Assembly (NCBI GenBank): GCA_977017575.1
Contig: CDRNVI010000009.1
Coordinates: forward strand, 496,001 to 560,000
Length of the DNA: 64,000 bases
Direction: 5' to 3'
From: Paramoeba atlantica
Taxonomy: Eukaryota > Protista > Discosea
In this document: positions 26,641 to 44,943 of the stretch, one piece after another
Layout of the letters: each line of letters begins with the position of its first letter
How positions within the stretch are numbered: the stretch's first letter is position 1
Program-made: the position numbers and the translations under genes
The notes under the pieces: generated by a model
Seen by the model: only the letters and a program-made list of their open reading frames with translations
The model's database searches: none
Told to the model about the DNA's origin: nothing

Positions 26641-26989
26641 CCTTTCATACTAATGCTTATGCAAAAATGAATTTCACATAGGAGGTGCATTTAGTTCCAA
26701 TATTTTTCTTTGTATCGTTGCAAGTTTCAGAAAAAGTGGATTGAACCGTTTGCTGTCGTGCTCACATCGGCAAGTGACTTATACAGCAGACGAAGGCTAA
26801 GTACTGAAGTGTCATAGGGATCGAATGATTAGGATACATAAAATAAAAAGTCTGTTTGTTTTCGAAAAATTTTCTGCAAGTTAGTTCCGCGCGGTTGGAT
26901 TGATAGGTTAAATGTTCAGGAGAAAATTGTAAATCCTTTAACTGGGCAAATTCTCCCAGTGTTGGTTGGTTGGTTGGTTGGTTGTTTTG

Positions 26990-27421
26990 GTAAACGAAAC
27001 GGTAGAAACATCGACATGCCTCCGGTAGTTCGATCTGGTAGAATCCACATCGCAGATCGCGCTTAACTGCCGCATCGTATTGCACTGCATCCACGTACGT
27101 AGAGGGCTGTGAAATTGGTACTTGGGCCTCATGTGCTTCGTGAAGAGCGTAATTATGAGCAGTTGGCCAACAGATGAATCGTCGACGTGGCTTTTCGTCG
27201 CGATATTCTAGCGTCGTAAATGGGACAATCGTGCCTTTGGTTGGGCTCATTTTCAGCCTTTCTTCAGCTACACTTTTGATTATTCCACATTTGGTCAATT
27301 GATCTATGTCATTTTGTGAAATAGTCGTTTTCGAGGCTGGTTGTATTTTCGGAACTGGTATTTGGGGGTTTATGAGTTGATTCCATACGTCACCGAAACG
27401 CTCTTTTGTCTGCGAATTCAT
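26990..27421 (-). pseudogene. YR1 RT N-terminal fragment
   Basis: PFTTLE..RRRFICWP..KRDLRCGFYQ is colinear with the YR2 RT. Confidence 0.85.
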
Positions 27422-27677
27422 TAAAGCTCTTACCTTCTCTAGCTGAATAGCTGAAACCTCGGTAACATGCAGAGGTACAGTGTCCCTCTGTTCTCTTGTT
27501 GAGAGTTTTGTTCGCCGATTTGAGCCCCTAACTGGTCCACTAAAAAGGACTCAGTGTATTTGTTGTTGTTGTTGTTGTTTGTTCGCCGATGCATTCTACT
27601 TAACGTTCTTTTCTGTGCCGGTAATAGGCTTTCATTCAAAGCAATCCAATCTCCATTCATCAAATTGTTCGGTTTAT

Positions 27678-28976
27678 TTATAGTCTTCGCGTGGTATTTT
27701 GAGTTCCGAGTGCAAGTGCCGTCGCTTCGCTGGGCCCCGCGTATCTCAAAAGTGTTGCCACCTGCTTGTGATGAGAGAGCCTCATGACTTGTTCGAGGGA
27801 CTGGTGCCCCGTAGCTACGTGGTGCATTAGACTGGTGATGGCTCCATGTTTGAGGGAATGGGATGTGTACTGGAGACCCATGTGATGTTTGAGGAAACGG
27901 GAAATACTGGTGGTTGTAAGTGTACTGATTTTCTGGTTCGATTTTATATTCTTCACATGGTTGTAAATAAGGGTCGTACTCGGGCCTTCGATAACAACCA
28001 TGTTGTCCGGTCGAAAAGGCTGCTCTTTGGTAGTCTTGGTTTTCGCACCCCAATTGATAACTATTCTGTTCGGAGTTCTGACCACAAAATCTCGACCCAC
28101 AAGATTGCAAACCTCGCCAACCCGCGAAGCCGTTTTGAACGCTAAATGCATTACAGCAGCCATCTCCTTTGACATGATCGGTGTAAGCCGTTCTATAGCT
28201 TGACGATTCATCGGCGCTGCTTGTCTCCGAGGGATAACCGCCCCACGCCTGACCAATGCCTTCGAATACATTTCTGTCTGAGTTGTAGGTCTGCGCAGTC
28301 GGCGGAGTACCGAAATCAAATGTCGCAGGTATACCAATTTGGTTTGAATGGTGGTATGTATTCGTATGATATACAGGACCACACCCTGGTCCGTGAGCGG
28401 CAATCTGCGGCGCCACATGTCCAAAATCAGGCGTGCCCTCGTATTCCATGTTGAGGTGGCCCATATTCCGCGTATTTCCTCTCTGATTTCCGGATTCGTG
28501 ACCTGCAATACGTTGTTGAGGATAAAGTCGGACGAGGCTGTTTGGATTCCAGACGTTCGCATATTTGTTTCGCTGATCGTACCACCGCATCTTTGGGTGA
28601 CCTGTGATATCGCATTCTTCGTGACTGGAGATTTCTTCCACACTGTATTGTTCACGTTTGTGGTCTTGGGGCGAACGTTTGGCTTCTTGGTCTTCTGCTT
28701 TGGAGCGAGGTTTCCGGTATTTTTCGCTATGGTGTTCGTCTTTGACTTGCTTTTGTATTGTTTCCGAGTTTGAAGTGAAATTTTTGTTTTTATTTTTACT
28801 GACTTGCAATTTTGTACTGAAATTTTTGTTTTTAGTATCTGTTGCTGACTTTGAATTCTGCTTTTCTGGCATGATAATGCTATTTTCACTGGCAAAGGAA
28901 GTTTGTATAGAGACTGATTTTGAACTTTTATATGTTTTGTTTTAAACTGGCTTTGGAGGGGGTGGACTACTGGGAG
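27678..28976 (-). CDS. YR1 tyrosine recombinase, in frame behind the gag TGA
   Basis: ASRVGE, HSLKHG and HHKQVATLLRY; the frame is open from the gag stop (manual translation). Confidence 0.88.
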   Translation of the reverse strand, partial: LPVVHPLQSQFKTKHIKVQNQSLYKLPLPVKIALSCQKSRIQSQQQILKTKISVQNCKSVKIKTKISLQTRKQYKSKSKTNTIAKNTGNLAPKQKTKKPNVRPKTTNVNNTVWKKSPVTKNAISQVTQRCGGTISETNMRTSGIQTASSDFILNNVLQVTNPEIREEIRGIWATSTWNTRARLILDMWRRRLPLTDQGVVLYIIRIHTTIQTKLVYLRHLISVLRRLRRPTTQTEMYSKALVRRGAVIPRRQAAPMNRQAIERLTPIMSKEMAAVMHLAFKTASRVGEVCNLVGRDFVVRTPNRIVINWGAKTKTTKEQPFRPDNMVVIEGPSTTLIYNHVKNIKSNQKISTLTTTSISRFLKHHMGLQYTSHSLKHGAITSLMHHVATGHQSLEQVMRLSHHKQVATLLRYAGPSEATALALGTQNTTRRL

Positions 28977-30287
28977 TCACATTCGGCGGCCAGCGCCCCC
29001 CGCGGAGAAATCCGATGTGGGTGAGTACTGGGTCTTTCTGTTATTGTCCGAGGTGTAATTTGGGCGATAAGGTTCACTTGGCCTGAACCCACGACCTCGA
29101 GTCATACCACGTCCTCTTCCGAAATTTGCACTAGGATAAGTGGCACGACCGTATCCCCCACGTCGCGCAACTACTTTTCGCTGGTAGTTGACACTGTGTT
29201 CTATGCCATTCCCGATCACATCCGCCGGGTCTTTGTTCACCTCGTAGATCATTCGAAGATATCGTGGATCGGCTCCGCGATAAACACCCTGCTGCATGCG
29301 AAGATCGTCCAACGCTCTTTGCCCTGTTTGAACTTGTGCCACATTCTCTGGGTCAATTCCACCTCTTGCTTTAACGTCGTCTACCCAATGCTGCATTACA
29401 TCCCACATTGGTTGCAAATTTGGCGGTAAAGGATTTGGAAGTGCCAGGGCGGTTCGAATACGCAAAAGAAGAAAATCAACCCCGAACTCGCTATCCGTCG
29501 CAATGTATTTGTTCCACGTTCGGACATCGCGTACTTTAAATTCGTCGGCTTCTGGAATTGTTTCATCAGCATTTGTTTCACAAGGTTCCAATCGATCCGG
29601 CATAGCTGGTTCCGCTTTCACAATCTCGATTCTCGTGTAATTGAGTTTGGGATTAGGAAGGTGGTAGTTTCCCACATTATAGCTAATAACGACAGTTTTC
29701 TGCTCTTCAAATTCACTTTCTTCTATCGGAATACCGCGCCATGTTGTTGCTTCGCTTGGAGAACTTGTGGCCGCAAACCAAGTTACTTCTACCTCCAAGT
29801 CATATCGTGCAATCTTGTCCAAGATCTCCTGCACCTTAGAAGAAAGATTTTCTGGCTTGATGACAGGTAAGCTTGCGTACAACGCATTGGTAGCACTGTC
29901 CACGCAACAACGAAAAGTATTTGTCATGTCTTGGCGATCTTTCCGAACTGAGAAGGGAAAAGTTGAATGTGGCACTGCTTGTGTAGAGGGAGGTTCCGCC
30001 GACGAGGAACGAGACTGAAAAGCCTTCATTTCGTCGCGCACTATCCCTTGTAACTCTTTTCTCAACACTTCCTGCACATCTTGTCGGATGGTTCGGCGCA
30101 CATCTTCTTGAACAATCGCCATTCGCGATGTTAAATTTTCTAGCGATTGGTCAAGACGACTTACTCTGGTGGGTATATCACTGGTGCATTCCAACGAGTC
30201 CACACTTTCTACAGGATCGTCCCGACCTTGAGTTTGAAAAGCCACGGGAGCTTCTTCCTCGCGTGAGCGCGCCCGTGTAGATACCAT
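28977..30287 (-). CDS. YR1 Gag-like protein (MVSTRARS...), RG-rich C-terminus
   Basis: First ORF of the element, ATG 43 nt behind the SL exon, homologous to the gags of YR2 and YR3. Confidence 0.82.
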   Translation of the reverse strand: MVSTRARSREEEAPVAFQTQGRDDPVESVDSLECTSDIPTRVSRLDQSLENLTSRMAIVQEDVRRTIRQDVQEVLRKELQGIVRDEMKAFQSRSSSAEPPSTQAVPHSTFPFSVRKDRQDMTNTFRCCVDSATNALYASLPVIKPENLSSKVQEILDKIARYDLEVEVTWFAATSSPSEATTWRGIPIEESEFEEQKTVVISYNVGNYHLPNPKLNYTRIEIVKAEPAMPDRLEPCETNADETIPEADEFKVRDVRTWNKYIATDSEFGVDFLLLRIRTALALPNPLPPNLQPMWDVMQHWVDDVKARGGIDPENVAQVQTGQRALDDLRMQQGVYRGADPRYLRMIYEVNKDPADVIGNGIEHSVNYQRKVVARRGGYGRATYPSANFGRGRGMTRGRGFRPSEPYRPNYTSDNNRKTQYSPTSDFSAGGAGRRM

Positions 30288-30329
30288 CCCAAAAAATGTA
30301 GTATTACAGTAGGAAAACAAGAAAAATTG

Positions 30330-30365
30330 CAACAAGGTACAGAAACTGTATCTTTATCGTTAAAG
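30330..30365 (-). ncRNA. Retroposed spliced-leader exon (36 nt, CTTTAACGATAAAGATACAGTTTCTGTACCTTGTTG)
   Basis: Contains the euglenozoan SL core ACAGTTTCTGTAC and ends in TTG; identical at four loci; not followed by a GT intron. Confidence 0.85.
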
Positions 30366-30447
30366 AGAAAAGTATCATTTTATAATACAATTAGTCACTG
30401 ACATTCTATATTTCCCACTTCGGTGAATTATTATCCTTAAAGTCTCA

Positions 30448-30988
30448 GTTTTCATACCTCAACATATTCACCTTCTTGGTCACTTGCGAACGGGTAGTCC
30501 ACCCCACGCGGGGAGTGGATGGGGCATGGTGGGCGGGGCAAACGTTTCGTCGCGGAAATATGAAACAATATTCTTATATCAATCTTTATGCTAATACATA
30601 TTCACATGTACATTAATGTTATCTCACAAGTTGAATTTCAAAAACATGCGTACAATGCCCGCCGGCTATTCGGCAAAATAGCTCAATCATGTAAATTCAA
30701 AATCAATATTAAAATCAAAATGATGCGCTGGACAATTCTTATCGTAAACTCTTAGAATTGCGCCTCGCATCATAGGACAAATAAATTCAAACAGAAACAA
30801 ATCTCCTATAGTATGTTCAACCTCATCACTTTACTTTCAACCCATTCATATCATGATGTACATTATCAGATATCTTACTCCTGTGATTCACATTCAGATT
30901 CATATTACACATTCATATCTTGTTTTCATACCTCAACATATTCACCTTCTTGGTCACTTGCGAACGGGTAGTCCACCCCACGCGGGGA
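30448..30988 (-). mobile_element. Solo B1-A2-(partial B2) end of the YR4 family
   Basis: 67-bp direct repeat 30448-30514 and 30922-30988; about 30540-30754 is nearly identical to 44601-44816; junction hairpin at 30733-30760. Confidence 0.82.
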
Positions 30989-31413
30989 CCACCCAATCGC
31001 TAGTCCCTCGTACGTTCCATTCACCCTTTCGCACGTCCAGTTTGCTGCCGTCGTTGATTTAAATGTTCTTTTTTTTTTTTCTTTTTTTCGGGGTTAGGGG
31101 TTTTTTTTTATTTGTGTGTTGTATTATGTATTGCGTGCATCTATTTACTATCAATAATGTCCTCGGCTTACTGGGTCTGCAGGATTATTTTCGGATGATA
31201 CATAACGCGGGGATATTGCGAAGCCATGTCGTCGAAGCGTTTTCAATACTGCTTTTAATTCTGTTGTAATACCATCTGATTTTGAGACTGGGAGCTTGCG
31301 AGAGTAATTAGTTTATGGTGGGTAAGATATCTGGAAATTATAAACTATATTTATATCTTCGATTGTTACATAGAAAACTGTTGTTAATCTTACTCGTGTA
31401 ATTGTAATTTTCA

Positions 31414-31464
31414 ATGCCTACAACCCGTTCTCAGGCGGCCGCAGAGGTCGCGATGCGGCAAGAA
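31414..31464 (+). pseudogene. Displaced first 17 codons of the YR3 gag (MPTTRSQAAAEVAMRQE)
   Basis: Joins in frame to CAG ATG AGT at 36591 when YR2 is removed; the N-terminus resembles the other gag starts (MVSTRARS, MVQTRSKA). Confidence 0.75.
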
Positions 31465-31655
31465 TAAAACTCTTGGAAATGTAATTGGGCCTTTGTACTA
31501 GTGTCAGGAATTAAGGAAAACATGAAGGACTTATTCGTGAACTACGGCATGATATTATTTGCAAAATTAGACAGACTTTTCTTATTTGTATTTCGCACGA
31601 ATAAAAGTGGCCTTCTTGTTCTCTCTGTTCTATCTCTCTGTTCTCTCTGTTCTAT

Positions 31656-31691
31656 CTTTAACGATAAAGATACAGTTTCTGTACCTTGTTG
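31656..31691 (+). ncRNA. Retroposed spliced-leader exon joined at the AG acceptor of repeat A
   Basis: SL followed by ACAGACTTTT (31692) versus genomic TTAG followed by ACAGACTTTT at 31570/31571 and 36258/36259. Confidence 0.9.
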
Positions 31692-31733
31692 ACAGACTTT
31701 TCTTATTTGTATTTCGCACGAATAAAAGTGGAA

Positions 31734-32984
31734 ATGGTGCAAACACGTTCGAAAGCACATGATTCTCAAGAGGACTATGCCACGGATAGCGACACTGAAC
31801 AAACGTGCGGCACATATTACCCAAAACCGAATTCGACACAAATCACTTCGAGCCACTCACTTCCAGATGTTTTCCTCACCGAACAGGTCAATACAGTCGT
31901 GGAAAAGCTAACGCGTGCACTTGAAAAAGTCACTTCGAAGGTTGATGCGATGGAGGAGCGTGAACGGAAAAGGCGAAAAGAGACAAACATTACGGATCCA
32001 TCTGCACCGCGACACGGACAAGCACCTGGGAACACCTTATGTCCTCTTCCAACCTCCTTGAAAAAGAGATGCAGTGTGCCAGAAGAGCTCAACAAGCAAT
32101 ACGCCGCACAAAGGGTTATGCTCCCAGAGGAAGTAGAGAGTCAAGTCAATGAGGTTATGGCGACCGTGCAACAGAATGACATAGAAGTCGAAGTAACCTG
32201 GTTCCCCGTTGGAGGTAGGAAAGAGACAGGGACAACATGGCGAGGTACGGTAGAGGACAATGGAGACGAGGAAAATCCTATCATTGTTTCCTACCCGTGG
32301 GGTAACTATCCTCTGCCTAATAGCAACGTGTGTTATACGCGCATCGTGATATCAGCAAGTGAGCCAAAGATGCCAGGCAAATTGCCCGAATCGGACGATG
32401 AAACTGCACCATCAGAAGAGACGAACGACAGTTTCAACCTCCGGGACGTTACAACATGGAACACATACATTACCCAGGGGCCACTAGGGATTGAAATATT
32501 GAAACAGCGGTTGCGAACGGCGCTGGATCTCCCTTCTCGAATGTCACCACAGCTACAAGCCCTTTGGGATATCTTGTGTGCTTGGATAGACGATAGCGCA
32601 GAAAGAGGGGGCGTGAACAGCGACGCCGTCAATCACAAAAACGTCGGCCAAAGCACAGTTGACCAGATACGCATTCTGCAAGGAATATATCGAGGAGCAG
32701 ATGCTCGATATATACGCTCACAATACGTTACCCAGAAAGACCCACAGGACCGACTTGGTAATGTAATTGAGCAAAGCGTAACCTACAATCAAGCAACCAC
32801 GTATACGAGCCGTGGATCCCAGCGGACCCGCTATACGCCTCGCATGCCGATACGAGGGCGAGTATATGCAAATCGGACCCCCATAAATCGGACTGGCATA
32901 CTAGAACATGGCATTACGCGTCAAGCGACCATCGCACCACGCGCTCCGGATTTTCGTGGACGGGGGATCGGTCCACAGCACTGA
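31734..32984 (+). CDS. YR2 Gag-like protein
   Basis: ATG 42 nt after the SL; coiled-coil-like region and conserved EVEVTW..WRG..VSY..LP domain. Confidence 0.85.
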   Translation: MVQTRSKAHDSQEDYATDSDTEQTCGTYYPKPNSTQITSSHSLPDVFLTEQVNTVVEKLTRALEKVTSKVDAMEERERKRRKETNITDPSAPRHGQAPGNTLCPLPTSLKKRCSVPEELNKQYAAQRVMLPEEVESQVNEVMATVQQNDIEVEVTWFPVGGRKETGTTWRGTVEDNGDEENPIIVSYPWGNYPLPNSNVCYTRIVISASEPKMPGKLPESDDETAPSEETNDSFNLRDVTTWNTYITQGPLGIEILKQRLRTALDLPSRMSPQLQALWDILCAWIDDSAERGGVNSDAVNHKNVGQSTVDQIRILQGIYRGADARYIRSQYVTQKDPQDRLGNVIEQSVTYNQATTYTSRGSQRTRYTPRMPIRGRVYANRTPINRTGILEHGITRQATIAPRAPDFRGRGIGPQH

Positions 32985-33005
32985 CTCTCAAGAGTCCTCC
33001 CCCCG
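32948..33005 (+). promoter_or_regulatory. Putative recoding cassette: G_GAT_TTT slippery site, 6-nt spacer, GC stem enclosing the gag stop
   Basis: Equivalent sites at 29007-29013 (-), 37718-37724 (+), 43446-43452 (-) and 49670-49676 (-), with covarying stems. Confidence 0.8.
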
Positions 33006-35902
33006 AGGAAAAGCAAGTACACACCAATAAAAAGGAAGTTAAAAGATCAAATACAGAATCCAAAATACAAAAATATCAATATGAAGCAGAACACGAAAAC
33101 GAAAATAAAAATACAAAGTCAAATTACAATAAACAAAGCAAGTACAAAACGGAAAAACATTTATCAGCCAGTATTACGGACCAGCACCTCTATCCGACCC
33201 GTTTGCAAGACACAAACGGAAAAACTACCGTCCCACACGTGCAAATTTCGAATCAGCAATATCGATACCCACAGATCCACTACCCGACGTATCATCACCA
33301 AGGCTCATCGTCAGACCAATGGATCCCACATCAAAATATCGAATATCACCCAGCCACCGAGACACAACATACCCCAGGAACAGACCCCCTATTACGTTAT
33401 GTCCAATTTCCTCAACGTGACATCTCCTTCGGTAATGGAAGCGTTGAAGCCTATGTGGGCGGAGACAACATGGACTACCAGGTGCCGTCTGCTATGCCAT
33501 ATGCGGAGTTTGGGAATACCCATTACGGATACGGGGGTCATACGATTTATTATGGGACGCCCGATATCTACACAGACCAAGCTCACGTACCTAAAACACC
33601 TTATAGCAATTTTGAAGCGACTGGAACTCTCTACGCGGCAATCCCAAATGTACACGAAAGTGTTGATCCGCAAGGGGGCATCTATCCCACAGCACCAGGC
33701 GGCCCCAGTAACCAAGAAGGATTTGCAGAAAACGCTTATGAGCATGCCGGAAGACAGAGCAGTGGTTGCACTCCTTGCTTTCAAAACAGCTTCCCGGGCT
33801 GGGGAAATCGCCAAGCTACGCAGGAAGGATGTTATAGTGCTCCGCCCGTCACGTATTATCATCAACTGGGGTACGAAATCGAAAACCTCCAAGGCACAAC
33901 CATTCCGCCCCGACAATCTAGTGGTAATCGAGGGAGAAACCACCAGGCGTATCTACAACTACCTGAAGAGGTTAAGCCCGCATCAGCGGATCAGCAACTG
34001 TACAACACAAGACCTCACTCGCACGCTCAAGAAAGGACTGGGGAGCAATTACAGTTCCCACTCCCTCAAGCATGGATCAGTCCAATACCTGATGAGGCAA
34101 GTCGCCAAAGGCTCCATAACTATGCCGCAAGTCATGCACCTGGCCAAACACAAACAATTGTCAACCCTTATGCGCTATGCAGGTATGAACGAGACTACGG
34201 CACTGGCACTGGGAAGTCAGAAGCTGACCAAACTCCTATGAAATCTAAGACGCTCGAATACCAAGGTGGGTGGATCGGAATCACGGAGAAAATGCAGTAC
34301 GGTATTCGACGTACGATAACCAGAATGTTTCGCCGAACATGCCGCCCTACGGCGAAGCAGATGCAGACACTACCTATCCACGCGAAACATGTACCGCCGC
34401 TGTACCTGGAACGTTTAACTTCTTTGATGAATGCGCCTACGCGAGAACGCTTCACACAAGTGTGGGAACTACTTATTAACCCAACGAACGATGCACCAAT
34501 CACCACTATACCTCTCGTATCTCCCACATGTCTGAGCAAGAAAGACGTATGCATCTTGATCGATGTTGATGTCCTGGAAAGAGTAAATGACCAAACATTG
34601 CACAAATATCCGACCAAAGGAATCGTACACCCTTTTACGAACGTCGAAGAACGCGACACTGGATTACGTAGGCGATTTATTTGTTGGCCTAAAGAACATA
34701 ATGCTGCTATTGAGGATGCATATAAAGCTGACGTACCAATAGGACACCCCACGATGTATATGCCCGCCGTACAACAACAGTATGCAGTGAAGAGAGACCT
34801 CAGTTGTGGTTTTTACCAAGTAGAATTGCCGGTTGAAGCTCGGGCACATTATCGTTTCGCATATAACGGCGGCCTATACCAACTGAAGCGCATGCCCATG
34901 GGACATGCGTGCGCGCCAGAGATTCAACATATAGCAACCAGTGTCTTAGCTGGAGACGGGAAGTATACCTCATTGGCACATCGATTCAAGGGACAGTTAG
35001 ATATCTACCTGGACGGGATCCGCTTCAGTGGCACAGCAGAGCAAAGCCATGTATACGAACAGTGGCTGGAGGAACGGGCTAAAGATATTGGAATGACCTT
35101 CAAACCGAGTGATTCTTACATAGGTACGAACTACAATTTCCTGGGAATAGAATATGACCATAGCCAACAAAAATGCCGAATAGGAGAGCGTTTTCTCAAC
35201 AAGATCCCAAAACAATTACCCGAGTTGGCGCAACTTCACGTATACGAATCCTTAATTGCTCGCCTCATTTATGCATCCGCGGTATCAGGGATCTTATTAC
35301 CAAAGTACTATTGGGTGATAAAATATATTAGAAGACAGCTCTCAAAATTAAATAGAGGGGTGATGCAGGACACAGATACAATTGTGCCATCCGCTAACAT
35401 ATACCAGCAAATGAACGAATGGGTATACCAAATACATAAGAATCCATGGCGCGCTTGCGCAGACGTCAGTACCCCAGTAACAGTAATGTACACCGACGCG
35501 TCGAAAGCTGGATGGGGCGCAGTATTATTCCCTTCAATAGGCCCAATGACGGCCACAGGCAGCTTATGGGAAGAACCCTATGAAATAAACAAAGCAGAAA
35601 TTTTAGCGGTCGAGCGGGCCTTACATACGTTTGAGGCGTATTGGCACGAGAACAAACTTCTCCACGTATACGTAGATAACACTAGTGTGCAAGCCGCCAT
35701 GACACGTAGTTGGGCGGATTCAGAGGGATTGGCCGAGGTATTATATCGAATACTAACCTATTTACGCGAGATGAATATTATACATTCAACATCATACGTT
35801 AATACAAAACAAAACCTCGCAGATCCGTGGAGTCGCGGAAAATTTGATACTTCGCATGGGGTGATACTTGCGAAGGGGTGGAGCGGGCGAGCCCCGTCGT
35901 AA
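32948..35902 (+). CDS. YR2 Pol in the -1 frame: extension overlapping the YR ORF, then RT and RNase H
   Basis: Frame verified open from 32948 to 33203 and through ORF 33203-35902; KRDLSCGFYQ, MPMGH, YLDG, TDAS, E, DN and NLAD motifs. Confidence 0.88.
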   Translation, partial: GFSWTGDRSTALTLKSPPPEEKQVHTNKKEVKRSNTESKIQKYQYEAEHENENKNTKSNYNKQSKYKTEKHLSASITDQHLYPTRLQDTNGKTTVPHVQISNQQYRYPQIHYPTYHHQGSSSDQWIPHQNIEYHPATETQHTPGTDPLLRYVQFPQRDISFGNGSVEAYVGGDNMDYQVPSAMPYAEFGNTHYGYGGHTIYYGTPDIYTDQAHVPKTPYSNFEATGTLYAAIPNVHESVDPQGGIYPTAPGGPSNQEGFAENAYEHAGRQSSGCTPCFQNSFPGWGNRQATQEGCYSAPPVTYYHQLGYEIENLQGTTIPPRQSSGNRGRNHQAYLQLPEEVKPASADQQLYNTRPHSHAQERTGEQLQFPLPQAWISPIPDEASRQRLHNYAASHAPGQTQTIVNPYALCRYERDYGTGTGKSEADQTPMKSKTLEYQGGWIGITEKMQYGIRRTITRMFRRTCRPTAKQMQTLPIHAKHVPPLYLERLTSLMNAPTRERFTQVWELLINPTNDAPITTIPLVSPTCLSKKDVCILIDVDVLERVNDQTLHKYPTKGIVHPFTNVEERDTGLRRRFICWPKEHNAAIEDAYKADVPIGHPTMYMPAVQQQYAVKRDLSCGFYQVELPVEARAHYRFAYNGGLYQLKRMPMGHACAPEIQHIATSVLAGDGKYTSLAHRFKGQLDIYLDGIRFSGTAEQSHVYEQWLEERAKDIGMTFKPSDSYIGTNYNFLGIEYDHSQQKCRIGERFLNKIPKQLPELAQLHVYESLIARLIYASAVSGILLPKYYWVIKYIRRQLSKLNRGVMQDTDTIVPSANIYQQMNEWVYQIHKNPWRACADVSTPVTVMYTDASKAGWGAVLFPSIGPMTATGSLWEEPYEINKAEILAVERALHTFEAYWHENKLLHVYVDNTSVQAAMTRSWADSEGLAEVLYRILTYLREMNIIHSTSYVNTKQNLADPWSRGKFDTSHGVILAKGWSGRAPS
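32985..34241 (+). CDS. YR2 tyrosine recombinase, in frame behind the gag TGA (first ATG 33081)
   Basis: ASRAGE, HSLKHG and KHKQLSTLMRY catalytic motifs. Confidence 0.9.
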   Translation, partial: LSRVLPPRKSKYTPIKRKLKDQIQNPKYKNINMKQNTKTKIKIQSQITINKASTKRKNIYQPVLRTSTSIRPVCKTQTEKLPSHTCKFRISNIDTHRSTTRRIITKAHRQTNGSHIKISNITQPPRHNIPQEQTPYYVMSNFLNVTSPSVMEALKPMWAETTWTTRCRLLCHMRSLGIPITDTGVIRFIMGRPISTQTKLTYLKHLIAILKRLELSTRQSQMYTKVLIRKGASIPQHQAAPVTKKDLQKTLMSMPEDRAVVALLAFKTASRAGEIAKLRRKDVIVLRPSRIIINWGTKSKTSKAQPFRPDNLVVIEGETTRRIYNYLKRLSPHQRISNCTTQDLTRTLKKGLGSNYSSHSLKHGSVQYLMRQVAKGSITMPQVMHLAKHKQLSTLMRYAGMNETTALALGSQKLTKLL

Positions 35903-36590
35903 GTAACAGCAAGTAAAGATCTAGCAAGTACATAAGATAAATATTTAGATGCACTTTTGAGACCATACAAAATTACGTTCTACTACTAGAATAAGCCGAA
36001 TGGTAAACCGCGACGGAATATTAGACGATACACACATAATAGATGACAACAATACAGCTACTAAGTTGTTTATTAAACAATGGATTAATTAATATGTGTT
36101 ACCCAGAGACGGCTTGTCAAGGAGGATTCAACGTGTTGTCAAGGCCCAATTATAAAACTCTTGGAAATGTAATTGGGCCTTTGTACTAGTGTCAGGAATT
36201 AAGGAAAACATGAAGGACTTATTCGTGAACTACGGCATGATATTATTTGCAAAATTAGACAGACTTTTCTTATTTGTATTTCGCACGAATAAAAGTGGCC
36301 CACCCACCTCCCCGCTCCGCGCGGGCGAGCCCCGTCGTAAGTAACAGCAAGTAAAGATCTAGCAAGTACATAAGATAAATATTTAGATGCACTTTTGAGA
36401 CCATACAAAATTACGTTCTACTACTAGAATAAGCCGAATGGTAAACCGCGACGGAATATTAGACGATACACACATAATAGATGACAACAATACAGCTACT
36501 AAGTTGTTTATTAAACAATGGATTAATTAATATGTGTTACCCAGAGACGGCTTGTCAAGGAGGATTCAACGTGTTGTCAAGGCCCAATTA

Positions 36591-39500
36591 CAGATGAGTT
36601 CTCATCCAGAGGAACAAGTGGACGAGCCATTACCAATCTATCCGTCTTCAAACAAGCGCAGAGCGACGCGTCAACGCTCGCGTTCTCTTCCTCGTCTATC
36701 TAATCCTTTTACCCGAGTTGTAGAGGAGGAAATCCCGGAAAAAAGTGTTCCAGACCCAAGAGTGCACTCAGCGAACCAAATGGTGGAAGTGTTTGGTGGT
36801 CTGTCGAAGCAGTTGGAGGCGCTCCTTAAGAACCAGCAGGAGCAGCAGTCTCTTTGGGAGCGGCGTAGCACCCAAGAAAGTGAACGGTTTGAAACGCTTT
36901 TAAGTAATATACGGATCGGATCTTCGCTCCATGGCGGCGAACGGGCACATATGGCATCAGCTCCCGACACACCGGGAGATCAACCTTTGACATTGGACAA
37001 AGTCCGGGATGAGGTACGGAAGATAAAAGATCTATTGGATGATTATGTTGTGGAATTGAAGGTAACCTGGTATTGGACAGGAGAAACACCAGTGTGTGCA
37101 CAAACATGGAGAGGCGTGGCTCACACGACGGGAGATGAAACCGATTCAATCATTGTAACTTACCCTCACGGAACGTCGGAGCTCCCTCTGCCTGGTGTGA
37201 CTTACACCAAGATCGAGGTTGTGGGTAAAACACCAATAGACAGCGTTACTCAGGACAGCGTCGAAGAGAAAGAATTTGTTCTCCACGATGTCAGTACTTG
37301 GGAGTCCTTGTTGGTGCCTCAGAAGGATTATGATGTGTTGGAGAATCGTCTCCGTGTGGGATTACGTATGCCGACTACATTAACTCCGGAATTGCAATAC
37401 GTGTGGGATCTCTTCCATCAATGGGTACTCTTGACGCAGGGCAAGGGTGGGCTCAATCTTGCAGATAAGAAGCATTTAAAGATGGGCCAAATGCTACTGG
37501 ACCGTTTGCGGATAAAGCAAGCCATTCTCCGAGGAGCAGACCCGCAATACGTGGAAACTCATTATGGTGTTCAACAGGACCCAACGGATCAGTTGGGGAA
37601 CATGCTCGTTAGCAGCATAAATTACAACAAGACTCGAGGCAGGGCTGGCGGTCACCGAGGACGACGAGCATATTACGGTCGAGGAACACAGGAGCAGAAT
37701 TCCAAGGTACCGCGATCGGATTTCGCGCTGCGGGGGTCTGGCGGGAAGTGACTCGGAGAAGTCCGCCCCCGGGCAAAAAGCCAGTCTATACAAAGAATAA
37801 AATTAAAGGAAAATTTAGGGAGCAAAAAGAGCAGGGAGAATTTTTTAAGTCAAAGCAAGAAGCAAGAGAATGTACAGCGGATAATAAAAGCAAGTTTAAA
37901 GCGTATAACGCAGGATCAAGTCAAGTCAAGTCAAAGGCAAGGCAAGTCAACACATCTGCAGTCGGAGGAAACATACAGCCCTGTTTCGCACCCAAAACGG
38001 ACCCCGCAAACCGTTTTGAGGGACTCCCCCGTCACACAACCAACATGCGCGTTTTTGAGAGACGTGCGATATGTCCTCGCGGAGATGGGAATCACAAGAA
38101 CAGAAATGCAAAAACATCTTCTAAATTTATGGGCCCGAACTACGTGGATGACCCGCGCACGATTACTCCGATAAATGCGAGCCGCTCATCTTTCGTTCGA
38201 CGACGACAACGTCGTCGCATTCATTTCCGGACTAAGGATCACCGTTCAAACCAAGCACACTTACCTGAAACACTTAATTTCCGTACTTGCGAAGGCTCAA
38301 AAGCCTACAACACATGCGGAACTTCTCGCCAAAACTTTCGCCAGGACCGGGGCAGCGATACCGACCCGACAAGCACTCCCAATTTCCAAAGATCAGATCC
38401 GGCTGTTAATTCCCCTAATGCCAAACGATATGAAGCTGGTAGTGCTCGTCGCTTACAAAACGGCTTCCAGAGCGGGCGAAGTTTCAAAAATGCGGCGCAG
38501 AGATGTTATTACCCTTCGGCGGGACCGGGTTGTTATCCATTGGGGCCAACATACGAAGACTACCCGAGCGCAGCCGTTTCGGCCGGACTCTTTCACGGTG
38601 ATCGAGGGCGAATTTACGGAGGAAATTTACAAACTCTTGAAGAATCACCAATTAACCCAACGTTTCAGTCGAGTTACTACGGAGGGAGTGACCAATTTTC
38701 TGCGGGACCATTTGGGCAAGGGATACTCATCCCACAGCCTCAAACATGGGGCAGTGCGTGCCATGATGGAAGAAGTGGCACACAACAACCTCACTATGGA
38801 GGATGTAATGCGGCTATCAAAGCACAAACAGATGGCAACGTTGCTCCGGTATTCCGGGGTGACGGAAACTGCTGCCTTGGCGCTCGGCACACAGCGGAGC
38901 ACCAGGACACTCTGACGTCCAAGGTTCCACTTGGGTATGGTATTAAGAGGCCTAGCATAGAGAGATTAGGCGTACATTGGGAACCTGCCATGCAGGACGC
39001 TCTTTGGAACCCAAAGTTGGTGTGGTCCCGCTTGCACCGGAAGACAATCCGCCCTACCTCAGATATGATGGTGAAGGTGCCTTTGCATGCGAAGTACGTA
39101 TCCCCTCTGTATTTGGACTGTGTGCGCGAATTAATGAATCCCCAAACGCAGCACAGATTCGATTATTTATGGAAAGAAATTTGTAATCCATCAGTGCCCT
39201 AAATTATTCCGCGCCCAAGTCCAGTGAGTCCGTCCGAATTGACTCACAATGACTTGAAACAATTGCTTGAGGCGGACATAATTGAACGAGTCGAGGATAC
39301 TTTGGCGAATCCTACTAAGGCATGGGTAATCCCATTCACCACTTTGGAGGACAGAGAGGGAGCTTTTAGACGCCGATTTATTACGTGGACAAAGATCCAT
39401 AACGCTGCAATCGAAACTTCTTACGTCGCACATGTTCCATTAAAGCAGCCAGTTGAATATGTATCGCAAGTACATGAGGATGGTGCGGTTCTCCGTGATT

Positions 39501-40830
39501 TATCTTCTGCATTTTATCAGGTAGCCCTGCCGGGTTTAACTAGGTCCTATTATCGGTTTCATTGTAGTGGCGTGACATATCAAATGAAAAGGATGCCGAT
39601 GGGACATGCAATGGCACCGGAATTCATGCAAATCATTACGTCAGTTATTGCGGGCCACAGACATTACACGGAGCCACCGACCTTGCTGCGTCATCAAGTT
39701 CAACCGGACATTTACGTTGACGGTTTGCGTTATTGCTCTGATAAATTATCGGGAAAGGATTATGCGGAGTATGTTGATGCGAGAGCCAAACGTATCGGAG
39801 CCACATTCAAGGTAACAAAACAGGATCATGTAGAGAAGTACGAATGGTTAGGGGTAGAATATGACCACATCCAACATTCGCACCGCATGTCTCAGCGATT
39901 CATGTCGAAAATTCCAGGAACATTACCATTGAATTCACCCTTTTGCTTTTATGAAACTCTCTGCGCCAGATTGGTTTACGCCTCCGGTGTATTGCGAATT
40001 CCGTTAGCCAAGTATTATTGGATTATCAAATACATACGAAGGCAGGTTTCCAAACTAAACAAGGGCTTAATGAACGAGATGACGTCTGTTGAGCCCCCTA
40101 TGGGGGCGCTCAACCAGATGCACAGATGGGCTCAAGAAGTTCTCTCGAATCCTTGGCAAATTTATGAAGAACTACCGTTTACAGCTGCCACGCTATTTAC
40201 AGATGCTTCCTTGGATGGTTGGGGGGCAGTGCTGTTTCTGCCTGACGGCACGGTATACGGCACCGGGGCGCCATGGAAAGAAAAGATGGAAATTAACGAG
40301 GGGGAAGCCCTCGCTGTGGAGAGGGCAATGCTAGCTTTTCGTCCACAGTGGCCGCATATGAAAAAGACTTATATCATGATTGATAATACTAGCGTGCAGC
40401 ATGCTCTGCGAAAGCGATGGGCTGATTCTGAGGCTATCGCCCGCGCGTTGATGCGTATTGAGCAGTTAATGAAAAATTCAGGCATATCCTTATTTCCTCA
40501 GTATGTTAGAACAAAAGAAAATTTGGCTGACCCGTGGAGTCGGGACAAATTTTCTACTTGGCGACAGGGTGGTGTTTTCAAACTGGCCCCGTCACAGACT
40601 AGCGAGTGGGCGGGTGCGGACGTTCCCATTCGTTAGTCAATTGAAGCAAGTGTAAAAGAATTCGTAGTGGACACATCGTCCTAAAGTTATAATGATTAGA
40701 GGTCAAAGATTTAATGGCCTTCTCGAATATATATGAGACGGTGTTTACTGATTAGATATAGTTTATTGATGTTTTATCTCCAATGCCTGGACGAGGCGTC
40801 GCCGACCGCTTGTTACCCAAATACTAATTA
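36591..40830 (+). mobile_element. YR3: gag (to 37751), YR (37752-38915, TAA at 38172), Pol in the -1 frame (37718-40636, TAA at 39200); interrupted by YR2, 3' repeats truncated
   Basis: ORFs 36534-37751, 38175-38915, 37748-39202 and 39224-40636; one nonsense codon in each of YR and Pol. Confidence 0.88.
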
Positions 40831-43800
40831 CTGTCGTTTCATCGCAGCTAAGCAGGAGGTATTGTCTATATACAAGTCGATACACGTGTCGCGATTAAAG
40901 TGATGAACGAAGTGCTCCAAAGCAAGACGAACGGCCCTCGCCTCCGCTTTGTTGACTTCGTACTCGTATTCCTCGGGCCATTTATCTCCAGCACACAGCA
41001 TTTGCCCATAATCTAAGTATAGAACGGCGCCCCATCCCTTGGACGAGGCATCTGTAAATAACGTGTGATTGTGCGGAACGGCATCTGGGTGCGGCAAAGG
41101 GGTTACAGGAATATTACTCGTCAACTTTTTATTCCATCTGGTCAATGAGATTCCGACATAAGCAGGCAACATTGCGCGTTTAATTCCCAAATCTGGATTC
41201 CGATTTAATGCATTTATGCGTCGTCGAACAATTTTCAATATCATGTGATACTCCGGTAACGGTTCTCCCAAAATTCCGGATGCATATATCATTCTACCTA
41301 CAGCTGATTCTAAATCGTCGTATGTTATCGTACGGAAACTATGTTTTCTCAACCGTGCTACAATTTTCGGCACAAGCGCTACTTTCTTCTCGCGATGTAA
41401 ATATGACACTCCATTGAAAATATAATTTTGTTGGGGAGGAGTCCCGTGGTCTTTAAATCTTGCATTTATGAATGATGACCTGCGATCTACGAATTCACCG
41501 AACTTACTCGCCGTCTGGAAATCCCCGGCAAAACGAATTCCATCAATGTAAACATCGGCGCCTTTTACCGGAAATCTATCTTCTTTTGAACAGTATTTCG
41601 GGTCGCCAGCCAAAACTGCGGTAATCGAATGCATCAACTCTGGAGCACATCGATGTCCCATGGGCATAACTGTTAGTTCATACAAGTGGCCGTCACCTGA
41701 TCGAAAACGAAATTTTGCTCTCGAGTCAATTGGAATTCCTACTTGATAAAAACTGCATGCGAGATCCCTTTTAATTCCGTAATCTTGCTTCACCTGGTGT
41801 AAATAGTAGGCAGCATGTCGTAAAGGAATGGAAGGCACGTACGATTCCCGAATTCGAGCGTTGTCTGCTCTCGTCCATGCGATGAATCTTCTTCTTTCAC
41901 AGATACCATCGTCACCGTCAGGCTCCACTACAGTGAATGGAATGACCCATTGATTTGTCGGGCGTTTTGTCTCTTGTTCGTGGGACACTTTCGATACAAA
42001 GCCTGCGTCAATTAACAACTGTACATCGCTTAATGGGACAGAGAAAAATTGAGGAGATTCTTTTTCTGGTTCTGGTAACAGATCAAACATTTCACGTCGT
42101 AGGTACTCGCAGCGCTGACGCGTTTCCTCATTCATTAAACTCATGACTCGTTTGAAATTAATTTGTGGAATGTCAAATTTCACATGTAGCGGTAAATGAA
42201 AGTTCTCTTTCGTCGCTAGCTTGGTAGCTCTTTTAGTTCGCACGATAGTATGCTTGATTTTCTCCTGCGGCATGTCCCGCAGGAACTCGCGAAATAAAAA
42301 CCCTGATTCTATAGCGTTTTCAGGAGGGAGGTCGCTTTTGCGGTTCCCAACGCCAAAGCTGTTGTCACTGGGTCGCTATTGTATCGGAGGAGTGATTCGA
42401 TCTCTTGATGCTTCGCCAAATTTTTCAAATCTTCCAATGTTAACTTTCCCTGTGCTACCTCTCGAAATAGCATTGTAATTGCCCCCCTCTTGGCTGAATG
42501 AGTCCCGAACCCCGCACCTAGAATGTCGCGAATCTTGCTGTCCATCTTTCGCACTGTTGTTCGACACAGGACGTCGTAAGACTTCAGAATACGTAGGTGA
42601 TCCGCTATTTCGAGAGTTCCCTGTCCCGATATGACTGTATACATTGATTTTTTCCACGGGTTGCATCTTGAGGTCTTTGTGCCTCGACCCCACCATATTA
42701 TGATCCGGTTGGAGTTTACTTCCACAAAATTTTCCTTTCTCAGGGAAGCCGTTTCGCTCCATCTCGATGCACTCTTCCAACATATTAGCATTGTGACACT
42801 TTCGTTCGCCTCCAGGTTTGATCTTAGACGACAAAGAAGGTGTGGTGTCAGCGGCGTCATTTGGTGCATCGGCTCTCCCGCTCCCTCTGCTTGCAGGGCT
42901 CGAACAAAGAACTTGAGTGGATTTATGTTGGCACCCGCTAGGTTGAATAAGGTCATGAGATTTCTGCCGTACGTTAACCTGGTCTGCACTGATATTGGTA
43001 ACATTTGCAAGAACGTTACCGCGTGGATTGGATTTCGTTCGATTCTTCGCCAGGTACAGAATCCCTGAAACCTTTCCCATAGACGCGCACGAGTTGACCA
43101 AGTCCTGCTTGCCCACATCGACGCTATGGCGTCCAGCGCTATCCGTACTTCGTGCGTTACCAAAGTCACTCCCATGAGATGCTGTGTCAATTTCCTTCTC
43201 GCTTGGTTTGATTGTTGCAAACTCAAAACTCCTCCGTATACTTGCGTCGAGTTCACCAACCTTCCGTTCAAGTTTACTGAGCTTGTCACATGTTCCCCTG
43301 AACAATTCTTGAAACGTTTGGTTACTAGCGAGGTTTCCGCCCCAAAGCGCCCCCGTTTCCGGGGGGCCGGGACACTGGCAATTTTCGGGTGGTCGTCCTA
43401 TAACGACTTTCCGCTCTGATGAGCGGTGCCAGACACCCGCGACCGAAAATCCGGCTGCTGGCGTCGATGCGGACACTGGCGTAGGATATGATCGGGGGAA
43501 CGACAATTGAAACACAATAAACGATTACGGTAAGGTGGTCCACCGGGAAATATGTTGGCTTGCATCGACGGTCCCGGTGGTGGTGGTGGTGGTGGTGGGA
43601 AACCTTGGAACGGTGGTGGGTAATAGGGCGCAGAAAAGTTCGCAGCGTAATACTTCTTCTTGGCTTTATCCCGTTCAGTCAATTGGTCTGCTACGTGCTG
43701 GTAAAATTTGTCATTAGAACGTTCATCCTTGCTAATTTTACGGTGTACATCTTCAACGTCAATTTTTCGGGCGCGCCAGTAAGCGTCTCGCAAGCTTTGT

Positions 43801-44816: not shown

Positions 44817-44943
44817 TAAGGCCCTTTCTTTTGTTAAGTCCCTTTCTTTTGTTAAGGCCCTTTCTTTTGTTAAGACCGTTTCTTTTCTTAAGACCCTTTC
44901 TTTTGTTAATGACCTTTCTTTTGTTAAGACCCTTTCTTTTGTT
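44817..44943. repeat. 18-bp satellite block (GTTAAGACCCTTTCTTTT), about 7 units
   Basis: Read directly. Confidence 0.95.

What the first reader, a model, noticed from the sequence alone, without database searches (positions are those of the whole stretch)
31465..31736. Genomic record of trans-splicing in YR2: repeat A, then SL exon, then duplicated 5' UTR
A1 contains TTAG followed by a 40-nt UTR (31571-31610). Downstream, the SL exon is joined to the same 40 nt (31692-31731) exactly at that AG. The upstream A copy ends in GGCC like A2, not GGAA like the UTR before the ATG, so it appears copied from the 3' repeat. Inferred model: SL trans-splicing removes most of A1 from the mRNA, the element rebuilds its left end from A2, and here the SL was retained. 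This would explain split direct repeats as compatible with obligatory trans-splicing.
Basis: partly seen in the sequence, partly recalled or inferred. Interest (0 to 1): 0.85.

Follow-up and report, generated by a model that had tools for sequence, protein, structure and literature searches.

The report
Spliced-leader relic in a recombinase retrotransposon
A young, intact tyrosine-recombinase retrotransposon in a kinetoplastid-type protist carries a DNA copy of the spliced leader joined exactly at a splice acceptor, which shows that it copies itself from trans-spliced mRNA and hints at where its replication intermediates end.

Summary
YR2 (31464-36589) is an intact VIPER-like element: gag, tyrosine recombinase, RT/RNase H and split direct repeats A1...B1-A2-L-B2.

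Its 5' end reads: full A, CC, a 41-nt CT-rich filler, 38 nt of a 39-nt Euglenozoan-type spliced leader (SL), then a second copy of the last 40 nt of A, then ATG. The SL is joined exactly where A has TTAG.

New evidence from a public assembly of the same organism:
- Sibling YR2 copies have the plain form, with A running straight into AAATG.
- YR4, YR1 and YR6 also have SL-bearing copies, and YR4 and YR1 have plain ones too. In 4 of 4 families the SL junction maps to an AG of unspliced A.
- In 188 kb there are 12 SL copies. Eleven end at the same base, and their 5' ends are ragged (31-38 nt).
- In three families the A copy upstream of the SL stops at the A/linker boundary (+0-2 nt).

Best reading: trans-spliced mRNA is the reverse-transcription template. 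The left repeat is normally rebuilt by a homology-guided transfer onto A2. Here an end-to-end transfer kept the SL.

No RNA evidence was obtainable, and I found no published description. Other notes of this scan report SL-capped elements elsewhere in this genome.

The parts
31290..31463 (+). 5' end of host element D: repeat A of D (about 31290-31413), ATG at 31414 and the first 50 nt of its ORF1. YR2 is inserted here.
   Evidence: Window 31300-31413 matches the A2 of D in L002:14912-15025 at 97% (sequences). The D ORF1 frame continues at 36590 with no target duplication.
31464..31610 (+). Complete repeat A (left copy, 147 nt) of YR2.
   Evidence: Identical to A2 at 36152-36298.
31567..31570 (+). 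TTAG: the trans-splice acceptor inside A. The AG is at 31569-31570.
   Evidence: The SL copy is joined to the base that follows this AG. The same holds in YR4, YR1 and YR6.
31571..31610 (+). Segment 'a': the last 40 nt of A, which forms the 5' UTR of the spliced mRNA.
   Evidence: Three identical copies in the window.
31611..31612 (+). CC: the same two bases that follow A2, i.e. the first two bases of linker L.
   Evidence: Plain copies have AA here.
31613..31653 (+). CT-rich filler. It holds a 22-nt tandem duplication (units starting at 31618 and 31640) whose 18-mer ends in the first 4 nt of the SL copy.
   Evidence: The 18-mer occurs only twice in the window, at 31618 and 31640, and nowhere in the 5 loci held at that point (L001-L005).
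31654..31691 (+). DNA copy of 38 nt of the spliced-leader exon. It lacks only the cap-adjacent first nucleotide of a presumed 39-nt exon.
   Evidence: There are 12 copies in 188 kb, each joined to a different sequence at the same 3' base. Its 13-nt core and overall layout match published 39-nt Euglenozoan SLs (PMC3795323). Depth on the SL is about 45 times that of the element in DNA runs, and RNA contigs show the SL joined to other leaders.
31692..31731 (+). Second copy of 'a', here in its mRNA context as the 5' UTR directly after the SL.
31734..32984 (+). ORF1, gag-like, 416 aa.
   Evidence: No Pfam hit. It is 42% identical to the ORF1 of YR1 and 32% to that of D. Copies 99% identical exist in the ENA assembly.
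33081..34241 (+). Tyrosine recombinase ORF.
   Evidence: Pfam Phage_integrase, E = 6.7e-8, 32.9 bits against a cut-off of 27.1.
33203..35902 (+). RT/RNase H ORF, overlapping the recombinase ORF in another frame.
   Evidence: Pfam RT_RNaseH 26.5 bits (cut-off 24.8); RVT_1 below its cut-off. BLASTP to the RT ORFs of D, YR4 and YR5 gives E = 1e-91 to 1e-134.
35861..35882 (+). Purine-rich tract directly upstream of B1.
   Evidence: A GCGAnTGGGTGG-like motif occupies the same place in six families.
35883..36151 (+). Repeat B1.
   Evidence: 100% identical to B2.
36152..36298 (+). Repeat A2, carrying its own TTAG followed by 'a'.
36299..36320 (+). C-rich linker L between A2 and B2.
   Evidence: A CCCRCCCRCC...CCCC motif sits at the A2/B2 junction of all six families examined. 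A contig joining A2-L-B2 is present in DNA runs X1 and X2 (tables 5 and 5c).
36321..36589 (+). Repeat B2, the right end of YR2. D resumes at 36590.

Best explanation
The region is the aberrant 5' junction of a very young, intact VIPER-like tyrosine-recombinase retrotransposon.

Like all mRNAs of its Euglenozoan host, the element's RNA is trans-spliced. The acceptor is the AG 40 nt before the end of repeat A. The mature template is therefore SL-a-ORFs-B1-A2-L-..., and it lacks the first 107 nt of A.

Reverse transcriptase copies this mRNA to within one nucleotide of the cap. Normally the growing cDNA transfers, by homology within the 40-nt 'a', onto the internal A2. That rebuilds a plain A1 and discards the SL. 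The plain sibling copies show this outcome.

In this copy the cDNA was completed through the SL and then joined end to end, not by homology, to a strand ending at the A2/linker boundary. Some polymerase stuttering occurred at the joint. The result is A(+CC)-filler-SL-a-ATG. The product was then integrated into ORF1 of another element without a target duplication.

Shown by sequence: the structure, the plain siblings, the AG coincidence and the raggedness of the SL 5' ends.
Inferred: the order of events, A2 as the donor, and the nature of the strand that ends at the A boundary.
For: (a) The structure and the repeat identities are as described. A1 = A2 and B1 = B2 at 100% and all ORFs are open, so the insertion is recent.

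(b) The SL identity is secure. The 13-nt core and the 19+13+7 layout match published 39-nt Euglenozoan SLs. There are 12 copies in 188 kb. Eleven end at the same base and are followed by different sequences, with an ATG 23-55 nt later. Their 5' extents are 38 nt (six copies), 37 (three), 36, 32 and 31.

(c) In the RNA run the SL is joined at the same base to other CT-rich leaders. In the DNA runs SL depth is about 45 times that of the element.

(d) Plain YR2 copies exist in L002:5639-5790 and L003:9801-9947, with A running directly into (A)AATG or its remnant.

(e) Plain and SL forms also exist for YR4 (L006 against window 44508-44816) and for YR1 (L004 against the window and L005). YR6 has an SL form.

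(f) In 4 of 4 families the base after the SL equals the base after an AG in unspliced A. By chance this is about (1/16)^4.

(g) In YR2, YR4 and YR6 the upstream A copy stops at the A/L boundary, +0-2 nt.

(h) The filler holds a 22-nt duplication that includes the first SL bases, a mark of slippage at the joint.

(i) Gene order, split direct repeats and the lack of a target duplication fit VIPER/TATE as described in PMC6681497 and PMC12278014. The need to rebuild ends from an internal copy is shown experimentally for DIRS-1 (PMC7192593).
Against: - There is no transcript evidence. The only RNA run has zero depth over YR2, so splicing at this AG is inferred from DNA alone.
- Only 2 nt (CC) directly tie the left A to A2, and they could belong to the filler.
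- In YR4 and YR6 the boundary nucleotides are ambiguous between A2/L and the SL.
- Why a non-homologous transfer should land at the A/L boundary is unexplained. The origin of the filler is also unknown; it was not found elsewhere.
- The region upstream of the AG is not pyrimidine-rich.
- The locus itself was not found in the independent ENA assembly, so misassembly is excluded only by analogy with the other junctions.
- No SL RNA gene was seen, so the exon's first nucleotide and its intron boundary are inferred.
Confidence: 0.75

Rival explanations
1. Same retrotransposition of trans-spliced mRNA, but the upstream A was copied from a second, unspliced pre-mRNA (its A1) or from another genomic copy, not from A2.
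For: The trans-spliced RNA lacks the 5' part of A, so any second template carrying A would serve. Only 2 nt (CC) argue for A2. YR1 in L005 shows that SL-headed cDNAs can integrate with no A at all.
Against: An unspliced A1 has no discontinuity at the end of A. Yet in three families the A copy stops exactly there, at the point where A2 meets linker L. CC matches L, not the AA of A1.
Confidence: 0.1
2. DNA-level event: a plain genomic copy was broken and then repaired or gene-converted with a partial SL-headed cDNA. This inserted filler + SL + 'a' at the A/ORF boundary after integration.
For: SL-headed cDNAs clearly exist in this genome. Filler and microduplications are typical of end-joining repair. 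L002 carries the same YR2-in-D right junction with a plain A1.
Against: It needs a break exactly at the end of A in three different families (YR2, YR4, YR6). It does not explain CC. The left flank of L002 is different DNA, so L002 is not simply the unconverted allele.
Confidence: 0.07
3. Assembly or library artefact: a cDNA-like or chimeric read was built into the contig.
For: No spanning read or independent contig was obtained for 31611-31691. In the RNA run the SL forms snap-back artefacts (X5 record 25).
Against: The same architecture recurs in the window (YR4) and in a separate public assembly (YR6 in L004). There are twelve SL junctions in long contigs full of repeats. A full A upstream of the SL is not what a cDNA contaminant would give. 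The flanks of D are restored in frame.
Confidence: 0.03
4. The SL is there because the element targets SL RNA genes, as CRE/SLACS/CZAR do, or because it carries a built-in functional leader.
For: Site-specific retrotransposons in SL genes are known in trypanosomatids (PMC12278014). CRE-like elements are present here.
Against: The whole exon lies upstream and stops at the exon's last base. No SL intron or second half of an SL gene follows. The upstream DNA differs at every copy. Plain siblings lack the SL. A DNA-encoded leader would not receive the SL RNA's cap.
Confidence: 0.02

Closest known systems
VIPER / TATE (VIPER-like superfamily of the DIRS order) of kinetoplastids, with its derivative SIRE
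   Same: Gene order gag - tyrosine recombinase - RT/RNase H with overlapping ORFs. Split direct repeats A1...B1-A2-B2. No target-site duplication. Insertion at a fixed phase of short tandem repeats. Euglenozoan host (PMC6681497, PMC12278014). From my own memory, not checked here: SIRE was reported to donate trans-splice acceptor sites to T. cruzi genes (Vazquez et al. 1994).
   Different: Neither paper mentions an SL inside element copies ('spliced leader' occurs 0 times in PMC6681497, and once, about CRE, in PMC12278014). Placement with VIPER/TATE on a tree was not tested. The conserved C-rich linker between A2 and B2 did not come up in the passages I read.
DIRS-1 of Dictyostelium (internal complementary region model)
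   Same: The transcript is incomplete, and the ends are rebuilt from an internal copy before recombinase-mediated integration. Linear single-stranded cDNA intermediates are involved (PMC7192593).
   Different: DIRS-1 has inverted terminal repeats plus an ICR, not split direct repeats. There is no trans-splicing. Nothing here shows the form of the cDNA.
Relict spliced leaders in dinoflagellate retrogenes
   Same: A genomic DNA copy of the SL at the 5' end of a retroposed sequence is taken as proof that a trans-spliced mRNA was reverse transcribed (PMC5585692, PMC6050394).
   Different: Those are host genes recycled by retroposition. Here the SL sits inside autonomous retrotransposons, between a rebuilt terminal repeat and the UTR, so it reports on the element's own replication.
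CRE1/2, SLACS, CZAR (non-LTR elements in SL RNA genes)
   Same: An association of a retroelement with SL sequence in Euglenozoa. CRE-like elements in this genome also carry an SL at their 5' end.
   Different: Those elements interrupt the SL exon between nt 11 and 12 of a real SL gene (PMC5814959). Here a full exon precedes the element and no SL gene surrounds it.
Retroviral/LTR strand transfers, and template-jump chimeras of non-LTR elements (my own knowledge)
   Same: A short terminal redundancy ('a', comparable to R) guides a strand transfer. When the transfer fails, polymerases join ends without homology and add filler.
   Different: This is an analogy only. No primer-binding site complementary to a tRNA 3' end is present, and integration is by a tyrosine recombinase.

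Membership tests
VIPER-like tyrosine-recombinase retrotransposons (order DIRS) | Encodes a tyrosine recombinase instead of a DDE integrase | tested here: met
   Pfam Phage_integrase, 32.9 bits against a cut-off of 27.1, on 33081-34238. Homologous ORFs are present in YR1, D, YR4 and YR5.
VIPER-like tyrosine-recombinase retrotransposons (order DIRS) | RT and RNase H domains | tested here: met
   RT_RNaseH above its cut-off; RVT_1 below its cut-off in YR2 (19.7 against 29.6) and borderline in D (29.1). The nearest Atlas clusters are Euglenozoan RT/RNase H proteins; this is a lead only.
VIPER-like tyrosine-recombinase retrotransposons (order DIRS) | Gene order gag-like, YR, RT/RH, with the YR and RT ORFs overlapping | tested here: met
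   ORFs at 31734-32984, 33081-34241 and 33203-35902. This is the layout given for VIPER/TATE in PMC12278014.
VIPER-like tyrosine-recombinase retrotransposons (order DIRS) | Split direct repeats A1 ... B1 A2 B2 | tested here: met
   A 147 nt and B 269 nt, both pairs 100% identical. The same layout is present in D, YR1, YR5, YR6 and the YR4-like tail.
VIPER-like tyrosine-recombinase retrotransposons (order DIRS) | No target-site duplication | tested here: met
   The D ORF1 frame is restored exactly across 31463 | 36590.
VIPER-like tyrosine-recombinase retrotransposons (order DIRS) | Groups with VIPER/TATE in RT, RH or YR phylogenies | not tested
Retrocopy of a trans-spliced mRNA (SL relic) | SL exon ends at its normal 3' base and is joined to sequence that follows an AG in the unspliced form | tested here: met
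   YR2, YR4, YR1 and YR6.
Retrocopy of a trans-spliced mRNA (SL relic) | The transcript with this junction exists | not testable with these tools
CRE/SLACS/CZAR-type insertion into an SL RNA gene | Element interrupts the SL exon and is flanked by both parts of an SL RNA gene | tested here: not met
   The full exon lies upstream only, no intron follows, and the upstream flank differs at every copy.

The most novel reading that the evidence does not exclude
The end of repeat A, where A2 meets the conserved C-rich linker L, is a physical terminus of a replication intermediate. It would be either the start site of minus-strand cDNA or the 3' end of a plus-strand 'strong-stop' DNA.

If so, B-A is in effect a circularly permuted LTR, bounded upstream by a purine-rich tract and downstream by L. 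The 40-nt 'a' plays the part of R. These recombinase elements would then replicate much like LTR retroelements and be opened at the B|A junction by the recombinase.

The SL-bearing copies would be fossils of failed strand transfers. They would map the ends of intermediates that nobody has yet seen for split-direct-repeat elements.
Probability: 0.3. Interest if true: 0.85.

Novelty: new variant of a known kind. Interest (0 to 1): 0.68.

Why it matters
How tyrosine-recombinase retrotransposons replicate is poorly known. Only DIRS-1 has been tested at the bench (PMC7192593). For elements with split direct repeats (VIPER, TATE, Ngaro, PAT) the model is purely formal.

These copies give three things:
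- Direct DNA evidence that, in an organism where every mRNA is trans-spliced, the mature SL-capped mRNA is the template for reverse transcription.
- The exact acceptor used in four families.
- A set of natural 'failed transfer' products whose junctions mark where the cDNA ends and where the donor strand ends.

This makes the priming and strand-transfer steps directly testable. It also gives a simple marker, an SL inside the element, for recent retrotransposition in Euglenozoan genomes.

Tried and rejected
(1) RNA evidence. The RNA run has no depth on YR2, so neither expression nor the junction could be tested.

(2) Independent confirmation of this locus. The exact ORF1 is not on record. The ENA assembly holds sibling copies but not this insertion. 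Logan contigs break at the SL, so nothing bridges the junction.

(3) I suspected that linker L is the reverse complement of the purine tract before B1, as an ICR-like stem. Duplex energies are no better than with composition-preserving shuffles of L (z from -0.06 to -1.5). I rejected this beyond plain G-rich against C-rich composition.

(4) The SL copy at L003:6852 is preceded by CCCACCC, which looked like a piece of L. It is in fact the terminal inverted repeat of a Tc1/mariner-like DNA transposon abutting a CRE-like element.

(5) The filler was sought elsewhere, in the window and in loci L001-L005. It was not found, so its source is unknown.

(6) No SL RNA gene was found in the window or loci, and other notes of this scan report none. 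The exon's first base and its intron are therefore inferred from the 39-nt rule.

(7) Literature searches for SL relics in YR elements of Euglenozoa found nothing. The exact SL string is in no searchable paper.

(8) The organism could not be named, because run and organism labels are coded.

Full report
**What is there**

The window is a nest of retroelements beside a 9.5-kb array of an 18-bp satellite. The finding lies at the 5' end of one of these elements, here called YR2 (31464-36589, + strand).

YR2 encodes three proteins. There is a 416-aa gag-like ORF (31734-32984). There is a tyrosine recombinase (33081-34241; Pfam Phage_integrase, E = 6.7e-8, above the curated cut-off). An overlapping RT/RNase H ORF runs from 33203 to 35902.

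It has split direct repeats. A1 (31464-31610) is identical to A2 (36152-36298). B1 (35883-36151) is identical to B2 (36321-36589). A 22-nt C-rich linker, L (36299-36320), lies between A2 and B2.

This gene order and repeat layout are those described for VIPER and TATE of kinetoplastids (PMC6681497, PMC12278014). Four further families of the same kind lie in the window: YR1 (26762-30447, -), D (31290-40830, +), YR4 (40828-44816, -) and YR5 (46023-49990, -). They are related at 25-60% protein identity.

YR2 is inserted inside ORF1 of D. D's ATG is at 31414. Its frame is broken after 31463 and resumes exactly at 36590, with no target duplication.

**Check of the observation**

- TTAG at 31567-31570, followed by 40 nt that end A (31571-31610).
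- CC (31611-31612).
- A 41-nt CT-rich filler (31613-31653).
- A 38-nt block (31654-31691).
- The same 40 nt again (31692-31731), then AA and the ATG at 31734.

The left A continues GG-CC, as A2 does, and not GG-AA. The 41-mer occurs three times against none expected. The 3' part of the 38-nt block occurs four times against 0.01 expected.

**Is the 38-nt block a spliced leader?**

Yes, on four grounds.

First, its 13-nt core is identical to that of the published Euglenozoan SLs. Its layout (18 + 13 + 7 nt) is one nucleotide short of their constant 19 + 13 + 7 = 39 nt (table in PMC3795323).

Second, the window plus eight loci fetched from a public assembly of the same organism (188 kb in all) hold 12 copies. 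Eleven end at the same base (...TTGTTG) and are then followed by different sequences, with an element's ATG 23-55 nt further on.

Third, their 5' ends are ragged: 38 nt in six copies, 37 in three, then 36, 32 and 31. This is what cDNA synthesis stopping near a modified cap would give. The link to cap modification is my inference from trypanosome biology.

Fourth, in the one RNA run the block is joined at the same base to other CT-rich leaders. In three DNA runs its depth is about 45 times that of the element.

No SL intron follows any copy, so these are not SL RNA genes or insertions into them.

**Sibling copies: the key new evidence**

The exact ORF1 is not on record. A 99%-identical protein led to three contigs of ENA assembly ERZ24900291.

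- L002 carries YR2 with a plain 5' end. A runs straight into AAATG with no CC, filler, SL or duplication. It is 99.6% identical to the window over 9.1 kb, including the same right junction with D, but has a different left flank.
- L003 carries a second plain copy, with a 113-nt deletion that removes the ATG. A joint matching this deletion (31731 to 45) also appears in run X2.
- L001 is truncated at the ATG.

The plain form is therefore canonical, and the window's copy is the exception.

Three other families tell the same story.
- YR4 has a plain copy (L006, A running into C-ATG). The window's copy has full A, then the SL directly, then a 53-nt duplicate of the end of A that starts after TATTAG.
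- YR6 (L004, - strand) has full A, the SL, and a 23-nt duplicate that starts after CTCAG.
- YR1 has a plain copy (L004), in which A reads ...CGTCGTATAG followed by CAATTTTTC.... In the window's copy the SL replaces the last 9 nt before that AG, with no duplication. In L005 a third copy has no A upstream at all.

In all four families the base after the SL is the base after an AG of unspliced A. By chance this would happen about once in 65,000.

**Where the upstream A stops**

In YR2, YR4 and YR6 the A copy upstream of the SL ends where A2 meets L. That is +2 nt (CC) in YR2, and +0-1 nt in YR4 and YR6, where the boundary bases could belong to either A2/L or the SL.

In YR6 the UTR continues 12 nt beyond that point before the ATG. 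The stop is therefore tied to the repeat boundary, not to the start codon.

An unspliced A1 has no discontinuity at that position. A2 does. This is the best argument that the left A was copied from A2, and it suggests that the A/L boundary is a physical end of some intermediate.

L is conserved as a C-rich motif (CCCRCCCRCC...CCCC) in all six families examined. A purine-rich motif (GCGAnTGGGTGG) precedes every B1. Their mutual complementarity is no better than their composition predicts.

**Most likely mechanism**

Shown:
- The element exists in plain and SL-bearing forms.
- The SL is joined at an AG of A.
- The SL copies look like cDNA of capped RNA.
- The SL-bearing YR2 is young: its repeats are identical and its ORFs are open.

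Inferred, step by step:
- The mature mRNA is SL-a-ORFs-B1-A2-L-....
- Reverse transcription normally transfers within 'a' onto A2, which rebuilds A1 and drops the SL. This parallels the internal-copy rebuilding shown for DIRS-1 (PMC7192593).
- If the cDNA is instead finished through the SL, the mismatched tail has two possible fates.
- The tail may find a foothold a few bases upstream in A. This gives the YR1 type: the SL replaces 9 nt, with no duplication.
- Or it may be joined end to end to a strand ending at A2/L. This gives the YR2, YR4 and YR6 type: full A, SL, then the duplicated 'a'.

The YR2 filler contains a 22-nt duplication that includes the first four SL bases. That fits polymerase slippage at such a joint.

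SL-headed non-LTR elements in the same contigs are often preceded by poly(A) runs. The same template class therefore serves target-primed elements too.

**Limits**

- There is no transcript evidence, and no spanning read or independent contig for this particular junction.
- The A2 origin rests on 2 nt plus the boundary argument.
- The source of the filler is unknown.
- No SL RNA gene was seen.
- Phylogenetic membership in the VIPER-like group was not tested.

**Comparison and novelty**

The element is a new member of a known kind: VIPER-like, with split direct repeats. SL relics as proof of retroposition are known for dinoflagellate host genes. I found no report of SL relics inside tyrosine-recombinase elements, nor of their use to map strand-transfer ends.

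Such repeats also occur in hosts without trans-splicing (Ngaro, PAT; PMC6681497). Trans-splicing is one cause of the incomplete transcript that these repeats compensate for.

Other first-stage notes of this scan report SL-capped elements on other pieces of this genome, and the YR4 junction in this window. I checked the YR4 junction and the general claim myself.

Noticed in passing
window 31414-31463 and 36590-37751: YR2 is inserted 50 nt into ORF1 of another YR element (D). The frame is restored exactly across the insertion and there is no target duplication. L002 carries the same right junction but a different left flank (an RT ORF of another element). This suggests either a read-through retrotransposition of YR2 together with D, or ectopic recombination.
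   Followed up: partly
window 36299-36320, 46217-46233 (-), 30515-30537 (-); L002:15026-15048; L004:14588-14605 and about 16190-16213 (-): A C-rich linker (CCCRCCCRCC...CCCC, 17-25 nt) sits between A2 and B2 in all six YR families examined. A purine-rich GCGAnTGGGTGG motif sits directly before every B1. Both are conserved although the A and B repeats themselves differ greatly between families. Their pairing is no better than with shuffled controls.
   Followed up: partly
window 30372-30447 with 30330-30371 (-); L004:9866-10000: In the window's YR1 copy the SL replaces the last 9 nt before the acceptor AG of A, with no duplication. This is a second type of SL-bearing junction. That copy is itself inserted 67 nt into the B2 of a YR4-like B-A-L-B tail (30448-30988).
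   Followed up: yes
L005:9546-10122: A third YR1 copy has an SL with no A upstream, only a run of T. Its SL copy is split by an insertion of about 530 bp flanked by an 8-bp duplication (TCTGTACC).
   Followed up: partly
L006:2625, L006:7496, L008:5433, L008:6115 (all -): SL-headed units sit directly after long poly(A) runs, sometimes two in tandem about 680 bp apart. This looks like head-to-tail retrocopies of trans-spliced, polyadenylated RNAs.
   Followed up: no
L003:5257-6835: A Tc1/mariner-like DNA transposon (DDE_3 transposase, 114-nt terminal inverted repeats at 91% identity, TA flanks) abuts the SL of a CRE-like non-LTR element.
   Followed up: partly
window 44817-44943, 49991-50731, 54477-64000: An 18-bp satellite fills the last 9.5 kb of the window. 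YR4, YR5 and a CRE-like element are inserted in it, YR5 between TTA and ACA of the unit with no duplication.
   Followed up: partly
window 40830/40831: D ends right after its B1, with A2-L-B2 missing; they are present in L002. There it abuts the truncated 3' end of the oppositely oriented YR4. This is a rearrangement joining two elements at or near a B|A junction.
   Followed up: no
window 31654-31672 (SL nt 2-20): The 5' half of the SL can form a 7-bp hairpin (ATCTTTA / TAAAGAT). The RNA run holds a snap-back contig of the reverse-complemented SL joined to the forward SL at this point (X5 record 25).
   Followed up: no
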